64,000 nucleotides of DNA, from positions 1 to 64,000 of the forward strand of contig CAJFCJ010000010.1 in the NCBI GenBank assembly GCA_904063045.1. Reading direction: 5' to 3'. The position numbers were made by a program, and so were the translations under genes. This DNA is from Dimorphilus gyrociliatus (Eukaryota; Animalia; Annelida). Below are positions 33,678-45,255 of the stretch, in pieces. Below the pieces are notes generated by a model. It was not told the DNA's origin, ran no database searches, and worked only from the letters and a program-made list of their open reading frames with translations. Each line of letters begins with the position of its first letter. Position 1 is the first letter of the stretch.

Positions 33678-36600
33678 ATGCATTCGTCAAGCTCTTCGAA
33701 ATTTTCATTACTTAAAATTGAAGGATCGAAAGTAATCTGCAATGTTTGTAAATATGAGAGTACGAACTATCACGAATATATGAATCACTTTTACCACACA
33801 AAGCATCAGCAAAACTTTCATCAAGGATTAAATGTTCTTCTATCAGACATTTGTCAAAGTTGTCATTCAGATAGCTCGTACAATGATGAGTACCCATGTA
33901 AAGCTATGCAACCGATTGCTAATTATATAAAAAGAACAATGAAAAACAACAATGTGCCCATAAATAATGATCGCCTAAGAAATCCACTGCAATCGTCTGT
34001 TAGACATCAATCGCAAAGCCATGTGAGTACACCCGTATTTAGAAAGGAAGTAATTGTTATAAAACCGAAGCCAGAACTTTTGAGAAGCGATGTGCAACAC
34101 ACTGCTATCGAGCCCCCAAAACAAGTTCAAAATACCAGTAGAATTCCGAGAAAAGAGTCTCAGCCGAGGCAAAAAGAACCTGAACAACATTCAAAGGAAA
34201 CAAATAACAGAGTAGAGGTTGCAGTAAATGTATCGCAACCATGTAATCTGTCCAAAACTAGTAAAACTTCAAGAACAAATGTTCAACGAATACCTAATAG
34301 ACCAGCAGATTTCGAAAAAAGGCCCATAAATATACCATTAGAGGAAGTAAGTCAAACTACATCATTTACAGAACCCAGAGATCCTAGAAGGCGTGTTCAA
34401 GAATCTCATAAAAGTACAGAGAATTTAAGAGACAACTCCAAAGAAATACCCACTGGACAAAAAGAATCTGAAAAAAGGCCTAGAGAGACAAGCAAGAGAT
34501 CTGAACTTATGAGAAATATACAAAAAACGTTTGCTGAACCTATAGATCCCAGGAAATTTATTCAAAATACCAGTAGAAAAACAGAAATGTTAAGAGTAGA
34601 TCCTAAACTAGTACAATCTAGACAAGGAGCACCCAATAAGACTTTAGGAGTATCAAAGACAAATTTGCAACAAACGTCTATTTCACAAAAAGAACCTCAA
34701 GAAAGCGCCGATCAGTCTGATAAACAAGTAGCAACTCCAGAGAAGGACACGCAACAAATTTCCACCGAGCGCGAAAGACCTGAAAATACGGCGGCAGCTT
34801 CTGACAGTAACTTGGAAGTTTCAGGTCAGAAACCACAGCAAACAACTACACAAAGTAGTACTCCAGTATCTGCCGTACCCGAAGGACTGAAAAATCTCCC
34901 TAAAAATTTATCACCAAGCAAAATCGATATGAAACAGAAGAGACTCGAAAATAGCATAGAAAAGATTGGAAGAAAAGTAACGTCGTGCCTTAAAGAAGGT
35001 CAAGTCGCAAAAGCGAAAAAACCATCTTTGGCAGATGAACTTAATAAAGAAGTTAATACCATTACAAAACAAACTTTATTAAAAGTTAAGAAGGAGAAGT
35101 CTATTTTAGGAGTTCTAGTAGCCAGTCCAAGCAAGACTGCAGAGCAGCGAACAGAACAGTCCAAAGAATTAGGGGCAAAAGTCGTTCAAAGTTCTTCGGT
35201 AAAGTGTCGTTACTGTTCGATTTTCCTAAAAAATATTGACGAATTAAAGGATCATTTTCATTTCACTCACAATGTAACACATACTGCAATCGATGGACTA
35301 TTAGCTAAAATGCATAATACACAACTATCCGAAATTGATACAGACAATGAAAAAGAGAGTACTGCAACAAGTAAGGCGAAAGATATGATGAAAAGTATAG
35401 AATCTGAAGAGATATCTACAAGCGATAAGGGGATTGCATCAAATGCTGAAAACTATCATCAGACTGAGAGTCTGGAACGTTCGATTTTGGATAGACCCGC
35501 AGCTGAATTTGAAACACATGATCCAAACAGATCCACGTTAGATACCGAAAAGCAAGATAAAGGAGAAAGTGTAGTTTTAAATAACCAAAGGACCAAATCT
35601 TCAATTGAAGTAAAACAAACATCCGCTAATAGTGAAATAAAGAACAATACGACAAGTGAAAAGAGTGTAGACTCTGATTGCAATCCACGAAATAACACCA
35701 CGAATATTAATAAATTAATAGAAACTGCAAACAATATTGATTCTGAAAAGGGTATAGTAAATGAGGAACAACATGTATCTTCTACATTCAATTCAAACAA
35801 TAGTTTATCTGGTGCTGAACTTCCAACAACTTATCTAAGTGAAAAGGATGTCGAATCTGCTATTCAAAAACGAAGTAGAGTAAAAAATACTGAGTCTGAA
35901 ATCGTTATGGAACAGGATATAGAAATTCAGAAGCAAGCTAATGCCAGAAATACTGAATCTGAAATCGTTACCGAACAGGGCTTGGAAATTCAAAAACGAA
36001 AGAGAATAAAAAATACTGAATCTGATATCGTAACAGAGCAATATGTAGACTTGGAAACACAACATACAAACAAAAATACTGAATCTGAACAGGATATAGA
36101 AATTCAAAAACAAGTTGTATCTAGTACTAATGAGTGTAATGATAAACCTTTGGCAACTGCAAATGATGAGCCATCTGAAACACAAACTAATGAACCTAAA
36201 CTCATTTCTGATTGTACAACAAATAAGCAACAAGCTGCATCTGACACATTCAGTTCAATCAGTGATATGGATCATGAACAGTCTACAGCAACTACTGTAG
36301 ATAGTAACAATTTAATATCTGGTATTGAACAGAAGGACAAATCCAAAAGTGCTGAACCTGATACTGAAACACGTGAGCAGATAGAAAATGCTACATGTAC
36401 AAACAATGCCACAAGGGAGAAAGACGTAGCATCTGATGCGTCAAAAGTAGGTGAAGTTGCTGTTATTGATAAAAAAGTCTCGTCTGAAGTTGAAAACCAA
36501 AATGATATCAATGATGGTACTCTTGATATTGAGAAACAAAGTGAAAATAATAGTTTGGAGTCTGAGATGAGCAAAGTAAGTGAAAAAGAGAGCGTATCTA

Positions 36601-39197
36601 AAGTTGATGAACAAGTTTCAGAACCTAAAGAGACTTTTAAGAATAAGGAAAATGTTAGAAATGTTGTTGGAGACGAAAACCAGTTGAAAACTTTTACACT
36701 TGAAAAAGGTGCGGCTAATAAAGACACTATATCAGATCTGATGAATTCCAAAACAGAAGAATCTGATGATAGAATTTTCAGTACAAGTGAAGAAAATGTA
36801 AGCCATAACTTAGAAAAAAATACTTCTGATTCCAAACTTGAACAAAACAAAGAGTGCAACGAAAATCCAATAGATAGCGAGGACAATGACGAATCAGAAA
36901 GGAAGAGATATCCTAAGAAATTACAAAAATATTTGTCTGCTCAAAACGTCCATGACTTTGGGATGGACAAGCTTCTTGAAATGAAGTTAATAGATGGTAA
37001 TAACATTAAATGTCAATATTGCGGTACTGTTATTGCACTCTCTGAAAAGGAGGGACTAAAAAACCATATTTACAATCATTTACATGAAACACCTTTATGC
37101 AATCGCAATATAGAGAGAGATAGAAAATTGAACTCATTCTGCAAATTAACAGAACAACTAGCAGATCATGTCGTAGGAATGACATGTAAAACTTCTGCCT
37201 GGCGTTGTGTTTTTGATGGGTGCACTTACTTTACTTATCGATCAGAAGACCTCTCAGACCATTTAAAATCACATCACGAAAAGATAAATAAATATATATG
37301 CTATTTGTGTAAAAAATCAGTTGAAAGCTTATCACTTCTTATTGACCATCTAAAAGTAGTTGCTAATTATATCTGCAAAGAGTGTAATTTTACTGATTGC
37401 GATAAAATTATTGTGAAAAATCATATCAAAGAAAATCATAAGATGGATGTTGAAATTATTGAAAAATTCAACTTGCTTTCTTGTCAAAAGGTTACCAACG
37501 AAAAAACAGATAAAATTTTGAATAAGGTTACAAATCCTGAAGTCATTCAAGAGGAAGATGTTAGAGAGGCTGATAATACACCATGCTCAAGTCCGTATGC
37601 GCCTTTAATAATAGACGAAGATAATGACGAAACTTTCACTGAGACTAGTAAAACAGATGACAATACGCCTGAGAAGCTTTCTGAATTGAATGGGTCAAAG
37701 GCAGAGATAGATAAAAATACAAATGTCATGAATACACTTGAAACTTTCTCAACCGCTAATGACCCACTATTACATGATAGTGATAATTTTGATGATTGCG
37801 ACGATACCGAAGAAAACCAATCACATTGTGAAAAAGATGACGACTCTATGAATATCCAAAATTTATCTGGTAGCAATAGAAAACATTCCAAAGCTCAAAT
37901 TTTGGATATTACTTTAAATCTTAAAGAAACAATCGAAGAATTTAAGAAAGCAGTGCCATTATTGACAAACACGTTTTCTTTCAATGGGAATAGTTTGCAA
38001 ATTATGCATTACAAAGAGCGTCAAGTCCAGAGTTCCCGCCCATGTCATGGAGAGAGTAGTCTAAGGTGCTTATTTTGCAAAAAAACTTTTCTTTTTGGTA
38101 TAAAACAGTTCTCAAAGCATCTCCTTTCGGAGGAACTTTATGAAATAAGAGAAAGTCCATATATATTATTCAAATGTAAAGAAAAATGTGAAGTCTACAA
38201 TAACGATCCAATGGAAATTTGCAAACATAACAAAATATTTCATTCAGGCGGCAATTTAGTAAAACCTGTTCTAATGAGTTTATTAAGTGAAAAAAAACAG
38301 AAACCTATAGTAGAAGCCCCAGTTGAAATAATAAATTCATCCGATGATGCGAAAGAAATCTCCCCTACCAATGATTCCAAAGATGATGACGATGCTTATT
38401 GTATTGAGAAGCATGAGCCAGAGAGTCAATGTGAGACAACTGTTATCTGTGGGCATTGTGAATTTTCTATAGAAGCAGAAGATGAAAATAGATATTTTAA
38501 AATGAGGCAGCATGTTATTCAAGGTCACCTGCCCAAGCCTTTCTATTGTTGTAAAAAAGGTTGCGATTTTTCAGCTGACAACTATTTTCAAATTGAAACT
38601 CACTTTGTATCTTGTCATATCTACATCACATTAGAAGAAATGCAAAGAAAGTATGTTACTGAAGAAGTTTCCAACGTCGGAACTGACAGAATTATTCAAT
38701 TCTCTCTGAGAGCTTTATCGCTGAAAAGATCTTCCGTTGGAAAGGGATCTGTATCAAAGAGGCGACGTCTATCAGCATTGGTAGAAAGTCGAGATGAGGA
38801 GGATGATGAGTATAGATGCTCTATTTGTTTTGCAAAGTTGACTGATGTCACTAAGATTGAAGCACATATACGAGATCATTTTGAATATAATAGATATGAA
38901 TGTCTTTTTTGTCTCAAGAAGTATAAAAATTTACTTATGGAAACAGTTGAACACGCTAGCCAGCATAAATCAACGTTGATAAGTTGTTTTGTAGAGATCA
39001 ATAATAGAAAGGTAAATGCTCTTGTTAAAAAGTTTGCAAAGGAGTTGCTAAATTGCAGAGGAATTATTTTTAAATATCCAAAGTGTTTGTTATGTAACAT
39101 TGGCTTTCCAGATGGAGTTCGAGCCGCAAAAATTCATTTAAATACTTTTCATAGATTAAACCCTGTTGTTAAAATTGATAGAAGTTGCATCAAGTGA
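33678..39197 (+). CDS. Large multi-C2H2 zinc-finger protein (1839 aa, about 13 dispersed fingers, long polar low-complexity linkers)
   Basis: One uninterrupted ORF with repeated CxxC...HxxxH units (e.g. CRYCSIFLKNIDELKDHFHFTH, CSICFAKLTDVTKIEAHIRDH). The N-terminal finger is matrin-like. No specific orthologue recognised. Confidence 0.85.
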   Translation: MHSSSSSKFSLLKIEGSKVICNVCKYESTNYHEYMNHFYHTKHQQNFHQGLNVLLSDICQSCHSDSSYNDEYPCKAMQPIANYIKRTMKNNNVPINNDRLRNPLQSSVRHQSQSHVSTPVFRKEVIVIKPKPELLRSDVQHTAIEPPKQVQNTSRIPRKESQPRQKEPEQHSKETNNRVEVAVNVSQPCNLSKTSKTSRTNVQRIPNRPADFEKRPINIPLEEVSQTTSFTEPRDPRRRVQESHKSTENLRDNSKEIPTGQKESEKRPRETSKRSELMRNIQKTFAEPIDPRKFIQNTSRKTEMLRVDPKLVQSRQGAPNKTLGVSKTNLQQTSISQKEPQESADQSDKQVATPEKDTQQISTERERPENTAAASDSNLEVSGQKPQQTTTQSSTPVSAVPEGLKNLPKNLSPSKIDMKQKRLENSIEKIGRKVTSCLKEGQVAKAKKPSLADELNKEVNTITKQTLLKVKKEKSILGVLVASPSKTAEQRTEQSKELGAKVVQSSSVKCRYCSIFLKNIDELKDHFHFTHNVTHTAIDGLLAKMHNTQLSEIDTDNEKESTATSKAKDMMKSIESEEISTSDKGIASNAENYHQTESLERSILDRPAAEFETHDPNRSTLDTEKQDKGESVVLNNQRTKSSIEVKQTSANSEIKNNTTSEKSVDSDCNPRNNTTNINKLIETANNIDSEKGIVNEEQHVSSTFNSNNSLSGAELPTTYLSEKDVESAIQKRSRVKNTESEIVMEQDIEIQKQANARNTESEIVTEQGLEIQKRKRIKNTESDIVTEQYVDLETQHTNKNTESEQDIEIQKQVVSSTNECNDKPLATANDEPSETQTNEPKLISDCTTNKQQAASDTFSSISDMDHEQSTATTVDSNNLISGIEQKDKSKSAEPDTETREQIENATCTNNATREKDVASDASKVGEVAVIDKKVSSEVENQNDINDGTLDIEKQSENNSLESEMSKVSEKESVSKVDEQVSEPKETFKNKENVRNVVGDENQLKTFTLEKGAANKDTISDLMNSKTEESDDRIFSTSEENVSHNLEKNTSDSKLEQNKECNENPIDSEDNDESERKRYPKKLQKYLSAQNVHDFGMDKLLEMKLIDGNNIKCQYCGTVIALSEKEGLKNHIYNHLHETPLCNRNIERDRKLNSFCKLTEQLADHVVGMTCKTSAWRCVFDGCTYFTYRSEDLSDHLKSHHEKINKYICYLCKKSVESLSLLIDHLKVVANYICKECNFTDCDKIIVKNHIKENHKMDVEIIEKFNLLSCQKVTNEKTDKILNKVTNPEVIQEEDVREADNTPCSSPYAPLIIDEDNDETFTETSKTDDNTPEKLSELNGSKAEIDKNTNVMNTLETFSTANDPLLHDSDNFDDCDDTEENQSHCEKDDDSMNIQNLSGSNRKHSKAQILDITLNLKETIEEFKKAVPLLTNTFSFNGNSLQIMHYKERQVQSSRPCHGESSLRCLFCKKTFLFGIKQFSKHLLSEELYEIRESPYILFKCKEKCEVYNNDPMEICKHNKIFHSGGNLVKPVLMSLLSEKKQKPIVEAPVEIINSSDDAKEISPTNDSKDDDDAYCIEKHEPESQCETTVICGHCEFSIEAEDENRYFKMRQHVIQGHLPKPFYCCKKGCDFSADNYFQIETHFVSCHIYITLEEMQRKYVTEEVSNVGTDRIIQFSLRALSLKRSSVGKGSVSKRRRLSALVESRDEEDDEYRCSICFAKLTDVTKIEAHIRDHFEYNRYECLFCLKKYKNLLMETVEHASQHKSTLISCFVEINNRKVNALVKKFAKELLNCRGIIFKYPKCLLCNIGFPDGVRAAKIHLNTFHRLNPVVKIDRSCIK
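35885..36111 (+). repeat. Coding tandem repeat, 63-bp (21-aa) unit x4
   Basis: AAATACTGA(G/A)TCTGA recurs at 35885, 35948, 36011 and 36074 (NTESEIVxEQxxEIQK). The last unit has a 12-bp deletion. Confidence 0.9.
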
Positions 39198-39538
39198 TAT
39201 GCTGTACTGGTGATTCGGTACGATATTGATCGAATGTTGAGAGAAGTAAAACACATAAAAATCAAAGGAACAATATGTCAAGAAACTATTTTAATGGTTA
39301 ATTTAAATCAATGGTTTGGATTTGGATTAAAGGGCACACTATTTAATGAATTGTTACTATTCTTAAATGAATGATTTCTGTATTTTACAAAAGGACAAAA
39401 AGTTTAGAAATGTTTTATTATTTCTATAATTTACATCATTTCATTAAATATTAATATGTACAATGATTTTTCAAACTGATAAAATGTGTTCGTGTGAGAA
39501 AAAAACAATAAATAAAAAAGCATGTTAATAAATATAAT

Positions 39539-42500
39539 TTATTTTTCAGTATTTTTAGTTTTTACTTTCTCAAAGGTATTCTTCAACAGTTTCTTATAAA
39601 TTCCTTCTTGTTTGAGGAGAAGTTTGGGATAACCATCTTCCACTATTTTTCCATTATCTATCACATAGACTTTGTCAAAATGAGAAGTATTAATCACGCT
39701 ATTAGTTAGGATAATGACTAATCTATCTCTGAATATTTCTTGAAACAGACTATAAATATGGCTGTTAATGGCATTATCGTAGGTTGCCTCATATATAACT
39801 ATCGTTTCCCTGTAAATTAATGCTCGGCATATTGATATTAATTTTGCCTCTCCAAACTCTAAATTCTCATTTAGATCTTCATTCAAGTCTTCGAGTCTTT
39901 TATTCAATCCGACTTGTCTCATAGAATATAGAATTTCGTCATCAGTAAAAAAATTGAAAGGATCAATATTCCTCCTGAGCGTATCAGAAAGAATGAGAGA
40001 TTTTTGAGGTATAATATTAAATCTTGAACGTGCGATCGACAATTCCAATGAAGTCAGATCTAAACCATTCATTAAAATTTGACCATCTCCACTATATAAT
40101 CTAAAGAAGGCACTTTTTAATATACTATTATAGTTTACGTCCTTTGAAACATTGATAAAGCAGACATGTTGATTTTTATGAATTTCAAAATTAAGGTCTT
40201 CCAATCCTTGTTTCTCATCCGAAATATACAAACTCAAATTTTTAACTACCAATTGATAGTTATGATAGTTTAAATAGTATTGATGAGGTCGATTTACATC
40301 GGGTTCTGTTGGATACTTGAAGAAATGGTTTATTCTATCTAAACTTGAAGTCTGTTTAATAGTATATTGTTAGCTTTGAAGAATGATCTTAAAAAGATTG
40401 ACTGATACGTACCGCTTTAGTTAATTCGACCCAACCCTTTATTATTGTAAATGTTGATTCCATTAGCTGAATAAAAAAATAAAGTATAAGACCATACCAT
40501 ACAAGGTCAACTTTAAAGAGGAAGTGTGTTACTAGGAAGACGATTGTAATATAACAAAATATTAACAATTGTACACGTATCGATAGCCAAAGATTACATA
40601 ACTCCGTCAAATATAGAAAGACTGTATATTTGTTATTATACTCATGAAGTTTATCCATAAAGAAATTCTTCTTTTCGTGTAACCGTATAACACACAACTT
40701 AATTGACGTATCTCTATACAAAAAACTCATTTTAGTCCTATAGGATTCTAATAACGTTTGTAGTGATAAAATAGCTGTGGATGTATAGTTGAATGTAACA
40801 AAAGCCAAGCTGCTAATGATCAAGCCGAAGACTATTGTCACAGGATAGATGGCGGATATAAAAATAATGATAACAATTCCGTATGTTGTATTAGCTAGTA
40901 GGTCATGTAATTTTCTGTGAAAAATTTCATCCATTAGCTGAAAATCTTCTTTGAACACACACAATATTGCATTTATAGGCATACTCTTAAACATCTCTAA
41001 AGGAGTCCTAACAATTTTCAGTAGGAACTTTGAAAAGACCTTTTCAATACTTTTCGTTAAGAAGCTTTGAGTTAAAAGTGATCCTACAAAACTAAGACAA
41101 GCAATTAAAAAGAGGAAGAGGAAAATCTCCAATTTTGGTATTGAAATTTTCCCTTTTAATGACACAATGAGGTAGTCCATAAATAATGATGCGCACATAG
41201 TTAAAAGTAGAATTATTATAACCAATATAAATAGACTTAAACTGCCAAATCTGAAGAATTTTCTCATTACATTTGATGTCTTTGCGATATCATATCTAAT
41301 GTGACCACAAATTAAGTCATTATTACCACAAGGTGGCACTGGTTCCATTTCAGATTGAAATATAGTTTTTGATTTATCATTTAACGGTCCATCATATATA
41401 ATCCTTCCGGCTTCTAGAAACATACATCTTTCAGCTTTTTCCACAACTTGCAGATATTTTGTAGCGATTATAATGGTTGAACCTTGCATAAAACTATTAA
41501 AACACTCCTTTAAGATTGCTTTTGAATCATTTATATTTAAGTGTTCGAAAGGTTCGTCTACAAGATAAATTTGAGCATCTTGATAAACAGTTCTTTAATA
41601 TGTAGAGAAGAGGTTAATAATTAAAAATCTAGGTCAATAAAAAAGAAAAATAGAAAATTATTGTATTCACCTTGCTATTAAAATCTTCTTTTCCTGTTCT
41701 TTTGTTATTTCATTAGTATATCCTCCTATAATCGTATTCTCTTGATTAGATAAATGAAAGATATCCTTAAACAATTGACACGATTCTATCACTTTCCAAA
41801 ATTTTTCGTGATCATAAGAATTTCCAAAAAGAATATTATCCTTAATTGATTGATTTAGAACACCGTCGTTCTGGGATAGATAACTTATTGAACCATTTAC
41901 CATTAAACCGTTGGCGGTGAAATCAACTTCGTATAATATTGATTTTAATAATAGACTCTAAAAGAAAAGATAAGTGTAAAAATATTATCATTTTTCATTT
42001 TTCTATCCCCTACCTTTCCCGATAAAGAATTTCCGGTAAGGATTAACTGTTCACCTTGAACTAGGCTAAATGTAATATTAGTTAATATGTTTGTCATATA
42101 CGGTGTTTGAACGATATTTAAATTATTAATATTCAAAATTTCTTCATTCATTTGCATATCAAATAAACCATTTGCGCCAATCATATCGTGAACAGAGCTG
42201 TTGTATTCATCTTCCTGCAGGAATGCGTTGATTGTTTTCAACCATCTTAAAGTTTTAAACAAGGAGGCTAAGCCTGTATGAAAGTATTTAAAACCAGTTT
42301 GCTGTAATATACTTAAAGATAACAATATCCTAAATATATCTGTCACATGAAAGTTTATGTCAATAAAATAAGACATATATAAAACTGTTAATAATAAAAC
42401 TCCTCTGGATGAAATGAAGAGTAAAGAATTGTACAAAGCTAATAGTATCCTACTCATAAACATTTCTTCAACTTCTCTTATCCTCTTGTTGGAGATAAAC

Positions 42501-43632
42501 ATAAGTAACGGCTTTTCCCAAAGATACATTTTCACGATTTCAATATTTAATAAAGCATTCTTAACATATTGAACGGTACTCTCCTCAAATGCTCTTTTGT
42601 CATTAAAGACATCATCTTCAAGTGTAGTAATTATACAAATCCATAGAATTAACAGTACAGTCAATGGTATTATTAAGATAGCAGCATTGCCCATTAAATA
42701 ATAATTAATAAAAAAAACTCCAGTAAACGTTAGTGGAAATGTTAATAATTGAAAACATAACAATATTGAATTTTGAATATGTTCACTATCGCATGAAATC
42801 ATTCCTATAACATCTTCTATTCCATTTTCATCAGAGAACGTCTGAATTTTTAATATCTGTTTTGAATAATCTCTTATTAAATAATTCATATAGTCTACGT
42901 TTTATTGACAAATATCTTACTTTTTTATATAATAAACTATGAATCATGCTTTTAACTCGTACAGCCCATAATCCACAATTTATACAGGAGAATTGATAAA
43001 ATATAAAGAACAATACCATTATTAATATGAACGCACCAAGGAGAATTATTCGATGCAATTCCAGCATGTTTTCTCCGTCGTAAATCTTCATCATTCTTTC
43101 AATTAAAAGAGGGAATAATAATCTACAAACTTCCTATATATAAATACACTATTTATTTATAGATAATCCATATTTTCCCGCCTTTAAATAGTACTTAACT
43201 GTTAAAATGAAGGATGATAATATTAAAAACACATTTCTTGAAGACTTATTTAATGTATAATAGATGAAAGATAAGAGATTTCTTGTTGATTGTCCATTAC
43301 TTTCCCTATTTAGGTTGTATTAAATATAATATATTTGATTATATATGTATTAATACTATTTATATATATAAAAGAAACCAGTATAACCTTTTCTTAATCA
43401 ACATGTACAAGTATTTTGACTCATAGTGAATAGGGATTCCTTTAATGTCTTTCTCTTCTAATCTATCAAAATGAGCTTTTTGCATCAAATCTCCTAACCA
43501 CCTGAAAGAATATTTCCTATCAATCCCTAAAATATCTACGCTAAATAGTGATTATATAACAAACCATGACGTAATCCTTGATAAGCAATTAGGCTTCGAT
43601 GAAAAATCAACTGCGTGCTTAAATATTCCCAT
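39539..43632 (-). CDS. Short-form ABCC (ABCC4/CFTR-type) transporter-like protein, ~1196 aa, with degenerate ATPase motifs; exons 43632-43565, 43501-43388, 43305-43195, 43095-42921, 42856-42014, 41957-41671, 41592-40413, 40351-39539
   Basis: Lasso motif (PNCLSRITSWWLGDLM..LEEKDI), TMD1, NBD1 (GNSLSGKS, SYLSQ, SIKDNILFG, YLVDEP), TMD2, NBD2 (NIIPQ, TLRRNIDPF). The eight exons sum to 3591 nt with consistent phases and no stop found. The true start may lie further upstream (possible exon 43768-43730). Confidence 0.85.
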
Positions 43633-44051
43633 AGTTTCGATATTCTCCTCCGTTGCGTGTTTCTCCTGTTAAATATTCACTTTTTCAATACTTCTTTCTA
43701 ATAAAAAAGAAACTGGTTCTCAATGAAACTATAGAAATTCTCTCAAACGCTTTAACAATAGCTTGGACCTATAGAGTTAAATTTGTTGAAAAAATGAAGC
43801 CAGTAGAATGTTATTATTAGTGGTATTTCATGTAAATATCTTGTATATTTATATTAAATAAAGCAATAAAATACATAAAATTTGCATATGAATTGCCAAA
43901 TAAATTTGTTTAAAAATAATCAAAGTTTTATCTTGAATATTCATAGATTCTTTAAAAAGTTATGTTTTTGCTAGCAATTTCGTTCTTTTCAGATGACTAG
44001 ATTTACTTGTTAATTACTTCATTGATAACAATTTTCGTTCGTCTTCTTCTC

Positions 44052-45255
44052 TTAAACTGATAGTTCTGACACCATAGAGCTTTCTTTTGGCTCACCGGAA
44101 AAGCTTGTTGAAGTAGATGTAGGCCTTTTTAATAGAAATGTTTCTTCATTGGCATCAGCCTCGGATGTTATATCTGAAGTTCTTACGGGAACAGCTTGTA
44201 CCGTCGAGTGCTTTTTTGCACTGAAACGATTTAAAAGATTAATTGATATGTATAGAATTTAATTTATGGTTAGAGATAATGCTTACGAGGAGATTAGGTA
44301 CATAAGTAAGGCTTGAAATCCTGCGTACTCCACTTGTAAAAAGTCTTTAGGATCATATCTCGCGTGTTCGTATGAAGAATAAAAGAGATCTATATCATTA
44401 ATAGACACTGATGCTAATGGGCCATTTTTTCTACATTCTAATAAGTATTCTCGAATATTGGATCCTGGCATACGTTTCTTCATTCCTGATTCTCTCAATG
44501 CCGCATCAAGGAATCTAACCGAGTCAACAGCTTTCATTCGATAGTAGTAATGGGTTCTATCTGCAAGCATTAAAGTTAATAATAATGCAGCTCTTATCAG
44601 TAAAATCTATTTCTTGATATAATTAATACCTATTAGAATCAATTTTCTCTCTAAACGGGGACTAAGTAGAGGTAATTCACACTTGATTGATAATATCTTA
44701 TTTATTTTCTCCGCGATATCCCTTTTCAATTTCTAATATAATATTCAATACATTATTCCATTCATTATTCTATATTGAAGTGAAAAGAATTTCTACATAC
44801 TTTTGGAACAGATGATCCAATTGGTTCGTGCGAACCTTTTCCACGTAGTTTATACCTGATAATTTGTCTCTTTAGAAACAAGAGTAGGACGACCGTTAGC
44901 TAATAAACAATATCTAGAGTTAATATTTTATTAATCAGAATGCAAAAGTGATCTTTACTTACCACTATTCCAAATGCAAAGAAGATTAAAACAATCTTTA
45001 TTGAAACGGATTTCTATATTTTGTAAAAAAAAAAAAAAGGAACTCATAAAAGGATATAGCTGGCTTTCTAATACATATTTTTATAATTCTAGCTCTATGT
45101 ACCGAGACTGGTAAACACCCAATCAAGTTTTGTTTTTAATTAGACCTAAAACTCAATTTAGTACATATACCAGTTCCTAGAAATATTGTATTATCGCTCT
45201 GTAGAATATATATTTTCATTGCGTAAACGGGCGTAACCATACTTACTAAGTCCAT
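44052..45255 (-). CDS. C1orf43: C1orf43/NICE-3 homologue (234 aa); exons 45255-45247, 45013-44963, 44899-44801, 44732-44630, 44560-44287, 44220-44052
   Basis: N-terminal TM followed by KRQIIR, HEPIG, YYRMKAVD, NIREYLL and YEHARY, matching NICE-3 family motifs. The exons total 705 nt in frame. Confidence 0.88.

What the first reader, a model, noticed from the sequence alone, without database searches (positions are those of the whole stretch)
39539..43632. Intact ABCC4/CFTR-type gene whose two ATPase sites are both broken: a candidate pseudo-ATPase transporter
Seen: the eight exons splice in phase into ~1196 aa with about 12 TM helices and both Q-loops, yet catalytic motifs are lost. In NBD1 the signature LSGGQ becomes ITKEQ and the H-loop VTH becomes ATK. 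In NBD2 Walker A GRTGAGKS becomes NVSKDVNY, the signature becomes LEFGE, Walker B LLDE becomes VIYE, and the H-loop AHR becomes TNS. Only NBD1 Walker A (GNSLSGKS) and LVDEP survive. Known: ABCC proteins normally keep one hydrolytic site (NBD2 Walker A/B with the NBD1 signature), even CFTR and SUR. Inference: hydrolysis is abolished while the fold and frame are kept, suggesting a passive channel, scaffold or regulatory subunit rather than a pseudogene.
Basis: partly seen in the sequence, partly recalled or inferred. Interest (0 to 1): 0.8.

Follow-up and report, generated by a model that had tools for sequence, protein, structure and literature searches.

The report
Intact ABCC transporter lacking working ATPase sites
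A small marine worm carries a complete, unbroken gene of the MRP/CFTR drug-pump family in which both ATP-burning sites have been dismantled, yet its reading frame has been kept since before two species split, so it probably does something other than pumping; no RNA evidence could be obtained.

Summary
On the minus strand, 43632-39539, eight exons join in phase through seven GT-AG introns of 56-82 nt into 1207 codons with no internal stop. It is a short ABCC (TMD1-NBD1-TMD2-NBD2). Both X-loops and both D-loops are lost too. Only the NBD1 P-loop, the NBD1 Walker B (DE) and both Q-loops survive.

It is a singleton and an extreme outlier. It keeps 27 of 55 near-invariant NBD2 columns, against a mean of 95% in 81 relatives. 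Its NBD2 end branch is 12 times the median.

A decaying pseudogene is unlikely. Neutral drift of only 0.02-0.03 substitutions per site would already have introduced a stop. The gene also branches outside an orthologue pair from two species whose synonymous sites are saturated.

Its likely sister paralogue (contig C11) is also degenerate at both sites. It is kept in the sister species under purifying selection (dN/dS about 0.1).

Best reading: a selection-maintained ABCC pseudo-ATPase that cannot run the ATP switch.

Weak points: no RNA evidence, no orthologue found, and composition drifting towards AT-rich codons.

The scan had noted this same stretch once before, with no follow-up.

The parts
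43565..43632 (-). Exon 1 (ATG at 43632-43630), N-terminal short-MRP-like start
43388..43501 (-). Exon 2
   Evidence: GT..AG intron 1 of 63 nt, phase 2
43200..43305 (-). Exon 3 (start of TM1)
42921..43133 (-). Exon 4 (TM1-TM2)
42014..42856 (-). Exon 5: TM3-TM6 and the first part of NBD1, ending in Walker A GNSLSGK (42034-42014)
41671..41957 (-). Exon 6: NBD1 Q-loop YLSQ (41882-41871), lost X-loop TIIGGYT (41735-41715), lost signature ITKEQ (41708-41694)
40413..41592 (-). Exon 7: NBD1 Walker B IYLVDEP (41570-41550), lost D-loop FEHLN (41549-41535), lost H-loop ATK (within 41468-41454), short linker, TMD2 (TM7-TM12)
39539..40351 (-). Exon 8: NBD2. Lost Walker A SKDVNYNS (40147-40124), kept Q-loop IIPQ (40015-40004), signature LEFGE (39862-39848), Walker B IVIYEAT (39802-39782), shortened D-loop TYDN (39784-39773), lost H-loop LTNSV (39709-39695). 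Stop TAA at 39541-39539

Best explanation
This is a real, intact, fast-evolving short ABCC (MRP-type) gene. The genome is that of the annelid Dimorphilus gyrociliatus according to earlier notes of this scan.

Shown:
- The protein keeps the full TMD1-NBD1-TMD2-NBD2 architecture and predicted folds.
- The consensus ATP site (NBD2 Walker A, Walker B and H-loop with the NBD1 signature) has lost all of its essential residues.
- The other site keeps only the NBD1 P-loop, the Walker B Asp-Glu and the Q-loop. It lacks the H-loop His, the D-loop, the X-loop and a usable partner signature.

Inferred:
- The protein cannot form the ATP-sandwiched NBD dimer or hydrolyse ATP at a useful rate, so it cannot pump.
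- At most it binds a nucleotide on NBD1.
- Because the frame has been kept far longer than neutrality allows, it is maintained for an ATP-hydrolysis-independent role.
- Most likely it is a passive or nucleotide-modulated facilitator or channel that uses the exporter fold, or a non-transporting regulatory or scaffold subunit. The data do not separate these.
- It probably belongs, with the C11 paralogue, to a small dinophilid lineage of ABCCs that began to dismantle the ATPase before the two sampled species split.
For: - Intact 8-exon, 1207-codon frame with canonical splice sites.
- ABCC identity: best solved relatives are ABCC2, MRP1, ABCC4 and ABCC5; NCBIfam MRP and CFTR models match.
- The NBD2 model has pLDDT 90 and is closest to ABCC6 NBD2, MRP5, ABCC2 and MRP4. 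The TMD2 model has pLDDT 88.8 with six long helices.
- Motif loss: only 27 of 55 NBD2 columns and 15 of 29 NBD1 columns that are at least 90% conserved are kept. Relatives average 0.95 and 0.96, with minima of 0.73 and 0.66.
- End branches: NBD2 7.85 against a median of 0.63; TMD2 3.66 against 1.04; TMD1 4.55 against 1.03. The ATPase domain accelerated about three times more than the membrane domains.
- Neutral bound: 5.6-5.9% of substitutions create stops. P(no stop) is 0.017 at K=0.02 and 4e-5 at K=0.05.
- Age: the gene lies outside the C11own+C11sib pair (100/100), whose dS is saturated.
- The C11 paralogue shares DEPF, a lost NBD1 signature, lost D-loop and lost H-loops. It is conserved in the sister species with dN/dS about 0.1. 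It groups with this gene at 84/99, and at 75/86 on TMD2 alone.
- Background: every known ABCC keeps a hydrolytic NBS2 (PMC7756269). An ATPase-dead TAP D-loop mutant still works as a nucleotide-gated facilitator (PMC4242082).
Against: - No RNA run holds the stretch, although earlier notes of this scan report RNA support for neighbouring genes of the same genome (unchecked). This hints at low or no expression.
- No orthologue in 1.84 billion representatives, in word searches or in metagenomes. Yet four runs of the sister species gave contigs of up to 45 kb, so the sister species may have lost the gene.
- Composition has drifted towards AT-rich codons: GC1 0.345 and GC2 0.270 against 0.444 and 0.332 in paralogues; FYMINK 0.386 against 0.310. 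This is a sign of relaxed constraint across the whole protein.
- The membrane domains are also 3.5-4.4 times faster than the median.
- The sister grouping with C11 joins long branches and is only moderately supported.
- The structure models lean on alignments of canonical relatives.
- A very recent death of the gene cannot be excluded.
Confidence: 0.55

Rival explanations
1. A silent relic: a member of a large, birth-and-death ABCC family that lost its function and its expression, and whose frame happens still to be open (a young unitary pseudogene, or a gene on its way out).
For: - No RNA holder.
- No orthologue in any search, although the sister species is well assembled.
- Amino-acid composition drifted towards the AT-rich background.
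- Longest end branch in all three domains.
- Pfam scores below or near the gathering thresholds.
Against: - An open frame of 1207 codons with seven intact GT-AG introns.
- Neutral drift is bounded at about 0.02-0.03 substitutions per site. That cannot account for more than 40 changes at near-invariant columns.
- The motif loss must therefore have happened while the frame was under selection. The gene predates a species split with dS above 1.
- Codon-position structure persists (GC1 > GC3 > GC2).
- Only a death within the last roughly 1-2% of divergence is compatible.
Confidence: 0.27
2. Still an ATP-driven transporter with reversed asymmetry. The NBD1 site (P-loop GNSLSGKS, Walker B Asp-Glu, Q-loop) would have become the one working site, and the H-loop Lys would stand in for His.
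For: - NBD1 has Glu at the catalytic-base position, where 82 of 87 relatives have Asp and all described ABCCs have Asp or Ser (PMC7756269).
- The Walker A Lys and Ser are kept.
- Both Q-loops are kept.
Against: - The partner signature from NBD2 reads LEFGE, with Glu where the phosphate-contacting Ser should be.
- The NBD1 H-loop His, D-loop and X-loop are all lost.
- H-loop His mutants of ABC ATPases are nearly inactive (own knowledge, HlyB H662A; that mutant structure appears).
- With the second site unable to bind ATP, a closed NBD dimer is unlikely.
Confidence: 0.1
3. Mis-modelled gene: canonical motifs lie in unrecognised alternative exons, or the true product is shorter.
For: - Junctions are unverified by RNA.
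- Intron 4 required a choice.
- This genome uses mutually exclusive exons in other ABCC genes (earlier notes).
Against: - No Walker A, signature, Walker B or H-loop pattern occurs in any frame of 38800-44600 outside the model.
- The degenerate motifs sit inside long uninterrupted ORFs of 276-401 codons, collinear with ABCC profiles.
Confidence: 0.04

Closest known systems
Short MRPs (ABCC4/MRP4, ABCC5/MRP5) and ABCC2/ABCC1
   Same: - Single polypeptide TMD1-NBD1-TMD2-NBD2.
- Short-type start of the protein.
- Best sequence and fold matches.
- Six plus six TM helices.
   Different: - These pumps keep a consensus site 2 that hydrolyses ATP, and an Asp at the NBD1 catalytic-base position (PMC7756269).
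- Here site 2 has no Walker A, no Walker B Asp, no H-loop His and no NBD1 signature, and NBD1 has Glu.
CFTR (ABCC7) and SUR1/SUR2 (ABCC8/9)
   Same: ABCC members that are not pumps (a channel; a channel regulator) and that use nucleotide binding as a signal.
   Different: - Both still bind ATP at two sites and hydrolyse at site 2 (PMC7756269).
- CFTR has an R domain and SUR has TMD0. Here the NBD1-TMD2 linker is short (low-confidence residues 83-95 of exon 7 only) and no TMD0 is seen.
TAP1 D674A D-loop mutant (engineered)
   Same: An exporter fold without ATP hydrolysis that still moves substrate downhill as a nucleotide-gated facilitator (PMC4242082). Here both D-loops are naturally lost.
   Different: - The mutant keeps both ATP-binding sites, and nucleotide binding is required.
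- Here one site cannot bind nucleotide at all.
- No activity has been measured.
Paralogue on G000:C11 (about 1110500-1114600) and its sister-species orthologue P0010
   Same: - NBD1 Walker B DEPF.
- Lost NBD1 signature (IKDTD against ITKEQ), lost D-loop and lost H-loops in both NBDs.
- Intron after the GK of the NBD1 Walker A.
- Groups with this gene in trees.
   Different: - C11 keeps the NBD2 Walker A (GKKDAGKS) and Walker B (LDEAT) but lost the NBD2 Q-loop.
- It scores 249 bits against the NBD2 profile, this gene 123.
- C11 has a conserved orthologue with dN/dS about 0.1; none was found for this gene.
Heterodimeric or full exporters with one degenerate site (TM287/288, TmrAB, BmrCD, TAP1/2, ABCB11, Pdr5)
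   Same: Loss of catalytic residues in a composite site with retained nucleotide binding.
   Different: All keep one fully competent site (PMC7756269). Here neither site is competent.

Membership tests
ABCC (MRP/CFTR) subfamily, by descent | One polypeptide with the order TMD1-NBD1-TMD2-NBD2 | tested here: met
   Pfam ABC_membrane and ABC_tran hits in order along the exons; collinear alignment to a 1286-aa paralogue.
ABCC (MRP/CFTR) subfamily, by descent | Closest relatives are ABCC proteins | tested here: met
   PDB sequence search: ABCC2, MRP1, ABCC4 and ABCC5 on top. NCBIfam MRP_assoc_pro and CFTR_protein among the top hits for exons 6-8, beside bacterial exporter models such as CydC. Foldseek: ABCC6 NBD2, MRP5, ABCC2, MRP4. 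The nearest own paralogues are ABCCs.
ABCC (MRP/CFTR) subfamily, by descent | Type IV exporter membrane domains, six helices each | tested here: met
   Hydropathy peaks. AF2 model of exon 7 with six long helices, pLDDT 88.8. The model depends on the alignment of relatives.
ABCC as a working ATPase class | Consensus site 2: NBD2 Walker A Lys, Walker B Asp-Glu and H-loop His, with the NBD1 signature LSGGQ | tested here: not met
   SKDVNYNS, IVIY-EAT, LTNS and ITKEQ. All 89 full-length relatives keep the NBD2 Walker A or the NBD1 signature.
ABCC as a working ATPase class | Degenerate site 1 with Asp (Ser in CFTR) in place of the catalytic Glu of NBD1 | tested here: not met
   Glu in IYLVDEP. 82 of 87 relatives have Asp. 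The rule is stated in PMC7756269.
Short MRP (ABCC4/5-like, no TMD0) | The protein starts at the L0-like segment, with no five-helix TMD0 upstream | tested here: inconclusive
   Exon 1 starts with an ATG. Exons 1-2 read like the short-MRP N-terminus (own reading). Another minus-strand ORF ends only about 650 nt upstream. There is no RNA to fix the 5' end.
CFTR | R domain of about 200 residues between NBD1 and TMD2 | tested here: not met
   The linker is about 45-50 residues. The only disordered stretch is residues 83-95 of exon 7.
Unitary pseudogene | Stops, frameshifts or lost splice sites | tested here: not met
   None in 1207 codons; seven GT..AG introns.
Unitary pseudogene | No transcript | tested here: inconclusive
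   No RNA holder was found and nothing useful was laid. The tools state that this does not show silence.
Unitary pseudogene | Neutral evolution (dN/dS near 1) | not testable with these tools
   No orthologue was found. Indirect evidence: the stop-free bound against the gene's age argues against long neutrality.

The most novel reading that the evidence does not exclude
This gene and the C11 lineage form a dinophilid-specific clade of full-length ABC exporters that gave up ATP hydrolysis altogether and are kept by selection. They would work as ATP-independent or nucleotide-sensing channels, facilitators or receptors. That would be the first natural exporter-fold ABC proteins with no competent ATP site, and a natural series showing the order in which the ABC engine is dismantled.
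Probability: 0.35. Interest if true: 0.8.

Novelty: new variant of a known kind. Interest (0 to 1): 0.6.

Why it matters
Every characterised ABCC, including the channel CFTR and the regulator SUR, keeps one hydrolytic site. The field treats that site as indispensable to the exporter fold.

A naturally maintained ABCC with neither site competent would show that the fold can be reused without its engine. The less degenerate, conserved C11 relative sits beside it, so the pair offers a natural experiment on which NBD elements serve structure and TMD coupling and which serve catalysis. Here the Q-loops and the core fold are kept, while the P-loop, signature, and X-, D- and H-loops are lost.

It would also add ABC transporters to the list of enzyme families with pseudoenzyme members. 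If the gene instead proves silent, it is a clear example of how far an ABC gene can drift before its frame breaks.

Tried and rejected
- RNA evidence. The look-up of sequencing runs gave one holder, X1. Its roughly 60 Mb of contigs mark it as a genome run, not RNA. Read laying placed only two short spurious pieces. Both caps are spent, so there is no verdict on expression.
- Orthologue hunt, all negative:
  - The representatives search with exon 7 found nothing above 24% identity.
  - The word search with exon 8 found nothing.
  - An exact look-up of the exon 7 ORF product is not on record.
  - The metagenome scan found nothing.
- Synteny route to the sister species through the neighbouring 1839-codon ORF. 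Only the genome's own protein P0151 came back, the C-terminal fragment search was blank, and the look-up of P0151 was withheld.
- None of the 150 proteins held maps to the window's MRP1-like gene at high identity.
- I first took the 'stops inside' for pseudogene paralogues that could serve as a contrast. They are introns of normal genes, so that argument was dropped.
- The intron after the GK of the NBD1 Walker A is not exclusive to the degenerate genes, so it is not used as a shared derived character.
- The 26-nt alternative for intron 4 runs into a stop and was rejected.
- Three full-text searches found no described natural exporter with both sites dead. That is a limited search, not proof of absence.
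- The joined 1207-aa protein was never sent to any search, fold or look-up tool. All searches went exon by exon, by reference. The exon DNA was concatenated only inside local scripts, to count length, stops, composition and stop-creating substitutions, and was not printed.
Full report
WHAT IS THERE

The window is AT-rich (GC about 0.31). It belongs to a 78-Mb, 349-contig genome that earlier notes of this scan name as the small marine annelid Dimorphilus gyrociliatus (not checked by me).

On the minus strand between 43632 and 39539, long open frames of 276, 401, 96 and 318 codons, plus shorter ones, line up in ABCC order. Joining them at GT..AG sites gives eight exons and seven introns of 56-82 nt (GC 0.15-0.28). 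The total is 3624 nt, or 1207 codons, with no internal stop.

Only intron 4 needed a choice: the 64-nt GTAAGA..AACAG intron keeps the frame and fits the TM2-TM3 spacing of relatives, while the nearer 26-nt pair or read-through hits a stop.

WHAT FAMILY

Pfam sees ABC_membrane in both halves and ABC_tran in the last exon, at or below the gathering scores. That already shows strong divergence.

The last exon finds human and rat ABCC2, MRP1, ABCC4 and ABCC5 as the best solved relatives. NCBIfam MRP and CFTR models are among the top hits for exons 6-8.

An AF2 model of exon 8, built on an alignment of 60 relatives, has pLDDT 90 and pTM 0.85. It superposes best on ABCC6 NBD2, MRP5, ABCC2 and MRP4. 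An AF2 model of exon 7 has pLDDT 88.8 and six long transmembrane helices after the C-terminal part of NBD1. A hydropathy scan gives about 12 TM segments overall.

The NBD1-TMD2 linker is short, so there is no R domain. The protein is therefore an ABCC by descent, of the short MRP type rather than CFTR-like. The models lean on the relatives' alignment, so they show compatibility with the fold rather than proof of it.

THE MOTIFS

Sources are alignment to an intronless own paralogue, to human ABCC2, to 81 full-length relatives and to profiles built from them.

NBD1:
- Walker A is GNSLSGK|S. The P-loop Gly, Lys and Ser are kept, and intron 5 splits the motif.
- The Q-loop YLSQ is kept.
- The X-loop TEIGEKG reads TIIGGYT.
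- The signature LSGGQ reads ITKEQ.
- Walker B is IYLVDEP.
- The D-loop SAVD reads EHLN.
- The H-loop VTH reads ATK.

NBD2:
- Walker A GRTGAGKS reads SKDVNYNS.
- The Q-loop IIPQ is kept.
- About seven residues of the X-loop region are deleted.
- The signature reads LEFGE. This genome's norm is LSVGE, so the key change is Ser to Glu.
- Walker B reads IVIY-EAT, with the Asp lost through a one-residue deletion.
- The D-loop is shortened by two residues.
- The H-loop AHR reads TNS.

No canonical motif is hidden in another frame of 38800-44600.

At columns that are at least 90% conserved in relatives, this gene keeps 27 of 55 in NBD2 and 15 of 29 in NBD1 (counting the split Arg codon). Relatives average 0.95 and 0.96, and the worst relatives score 0.73 and 0.66. 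None of 89 full-length relatives lacks both the NBD2 Walker A and the NBD1 signature.

One unexpected point: the NBD1 catalytic-base position is Glu, where 82 of 87 relatives have Asp. The review PMC7756269 states that all ABCCs have Asp there, or Ser in CFTR.

HOW UNUSUAL WITHIN THE GENOME

The gene is a singleton. The nearest paralogue, on contig C7, is 38% identical in NBD2, 23% in TMD2 and 24% in TMD1.

Of 46 other NBD2-type loci, 44 show a canonical Walker A in the piece fetched.

In trees with 81 outside relatives, its end branch is:
- 7.85 against a median of 0.63 for NBD2
- 3.66 against 1.04 for TMD2
- 4.55 against 1.03 for TMD1

The whole protein is fast, and the ATPase domain is about three times more accelerated than the membrane domains.

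IS IT A PSEUDOGENE?

For a pseudogene:
- No RNA run holds the stretch and the reads tool laid nothing useful. Earlier notes report RNA support for other genes of this genome, including the neighbour 8 kb away (unchecked).
- No orthologue appeared among 1.84 billion representatives (best hit 97 bits at 24% identity), in a word search or in metagenomes.
- Composition has drifted towards AT-rich codons at positions 1 and 2. GC1 is 0.345 and GC2 is 0.270, against 0.444 +/- 0.036 and 0.332 +/- 0.024 in paralogue exons. FYMINK is 0.386 against 0.310. GC3 is unchanged.

Against a pseudogene:
- 5.6-5.9% of single substitutions in this frame create a stop. The chance of staying open is 0.13 at K=0.01, 0.017 at K=0.02 and 4e-5 at K=0.05, before counting indels and splice-site hits. 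The more than 40 changes at near-invariant columns cannot have arisen in so short a neutral time, so they accumulated while the frame was under selection.
- The gene is old. The best outside hit, P0001, is the copy of the C7 paralogue in a sister species (Logan run SRR23372228). It is 82% identical in DNA and 95% in protein, with dN 0.028 and saturated dS of about 1.3. In trees of the exon 7 region, this gene lies outside the pair formed by the C11 paralogue and its sister-species orthologue (100/100). It therefore arose before the two species split.

An open frame kept over a span in which synonymous sites saturate requires selection for nearly all of that time. Only a very recent death remains possible.

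A DEGENERATE SISTER LINEAGE

Two other own paralogues are partly degenerate.

C11 (G000:C11, about 1110500-1114600):
- NBD1 Walker A GHCNSGK|S
- NBD1 signature IKDTD
- Walker B FLLDEPF
- D-loop QTLP
- NBD1 H-loop TQ
- NBD2 Walker A GKKDAGKS and Walker B LDEAT are kept
- The NBD2 Q-loop (ALTR) and H-loop (LTRR) are lost

C19 has ILDEP, NBD1 H-loop SN, NBD2 Q-loop Gln to Arg, Walker B VIEES and H-loop ASK.

The sister species keeps the C11 orthologue (P0010, on contigs of up to 45 kb in four runs) with the same degenerate motifs. That pair has dN 0.21 and dN/dS about 0.1. With dS saturated, pN/pS is 0.25. The canonical C7 pair has dN/dS 0.02.

An ABCC that lacks the NBD1 signature, both H-loops and one Q-loop is therefore demonstrably under purifying selection in this genus.

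This gene groups with the C11 pair at 84/99. With the NBD1 part removed (TMD2 only) the support is 75/86. The support is moderate and long branches meet, so the sister relation is probable rather than shown. C19 sits elsewhere and may be an independent case.

Scores against the NBD2 profile of relatives fall in a series:
- C7: 329 bits
- C11: 249 and 250 bits (own and sister-species copy)
- C19: 206 bits
- this gene: 123 bits

HOW IT MOST LIKELY WORKS

Shown: the residues that define both composite ATP sites are absent, apart from the NBD1 P-loop, the Walker B Asp-Glu and the two Q-loops.

From established knowledge of ABC ATPases:
- The Walker A Lys binds the phosphates.
- The signature Ser and Gly of the partner domain clamp the gamma-phosphate.
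- The H-loop His is needed for hydrolysis.
- The D-loops position the opposite Walker A and H-loop (PMC4242082).
- ATP hydrolysis at NBS2 drives all known ABCCs (PMC7756269).

Inferred: site 2 cannot bind ATP. Site 1 may hold a nucleotide on NBD1 but cannot close a canonical sandwich or hydrolyse at a useful rate. The ATP switch that drives alternating access is therefore gone.

A protein kept under selection in this state must act without hydrolysis. The TAP1 D674A mutant shows that an exporter fold without hydrolysis can act as a nucleotide-gated, downhill facilitator. SUR shows that ABCCs can serve as regulatory subunits.

I commit to 'non-hydrolysing ABCC-derived membrane protein, at most a nucleotide binder through NBD1, acting as a facilitator or channel or as a regulatory or scaffold subunit', at 0.55. 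I cannot rank the sub-options.

Rivals:
- a relic that died very recently or is silent: 0.27
- a transporter with reversed asymmetry using the NBD1 site, suggested by the Glu: 0.10
- a mis-modelled gene: 0.04

NOVELTY

The gene is a member of a known family by descent, but it fails two defining functional features of that family: a competent site 2, and Asp at the NBD1 catalytic-base position.

I found no described natural exporter with both sites dead in three full-text searches. That search was limited. I rate it a new variant of a known kind.

LIMITS

- There is no expression evidence, no orthologue and no population data.
- The trees involve long branches.
- dS between the two species is saturated, so dN/dS values are rough.
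- The structure models depend on canonical relatives.
- The joined protein was not searched or folded. Exon DNA was concatenated only inside local scripts for counting.

Noticed in passing
G000:C11:1108500-1116500 (L060), gene at about 1110500-1114600, minus strand; sister-species copy in L080-L083: An ABCC paralogue with lost NBD1 signature (IKDTD), lost D-loop, both H-loops lost and NBD2 Q-loop lost, but NBD2 Walker A and B kept. It is conserved in a sister species with the same motif states, dN/dS about 0.1. It deserves its own follow-up as a conserved, probably ATPase-impaired ABCC.
   Followed up: partly
G000:C19:2081500-2089500 (L061), gene at about 2083700-2087650, plus strand: A third partly degenerate ABCC: NBD1 Walker B ILDEP, NBD1 H-loop SN, NBD2 Q-loop Gln to Arg, Walker B VIEES, H-loop ASK. 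It branches apart from the other two in the tree, so it may be an independent loss.
   Followed up: partly
window 33678-39197 (+): A single 1839-codon ORF, A-rich on the coding strand (AT skew 0.2-0.33), with no Pfam hit. It is mostly low-complexity and acidic, with scattered C2H2-like Cys/His pairs near both ends. The genome's own annotated product is 1752 aa (P0151). No relative was found in two word searches. It ends 340 nt from the stop of the ABCC gene, tail to tail.
   Followed up: partly
G000, many contigs (for example C2:3365660-3382867, C1:2679764-2690437, C55:123199-132926): A large ABCC expansion with tandem arrays. At least 46 further NBD2-type loci exist. Most carry the NBD2 signature LSVGE or FSVGE (Glu instead of the usual Gln) and an intron just before the NBD2 Walker A.
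   Followed up: partly
window 44283-44570 (-): A 95-codon ORF on the same strand only about 650 nt upstream of the ABCC start codon, probably the last exon of another gene. It limits the space for a promoter or for extra 5' exons (a TMD0).
   Followed up: no
Logan runs SRR23372216, SRR23372228, SRR23372229 and SRR23372231 (L016, L080-L083): A related species with about 82% DNA identity in alignable parts and saturated synonymous sites (dS 1.3-2). It is useful for selection tests on any gene of this genome. The canonical C7 ABCC is 95% identical in protein.
   Followed up: partly
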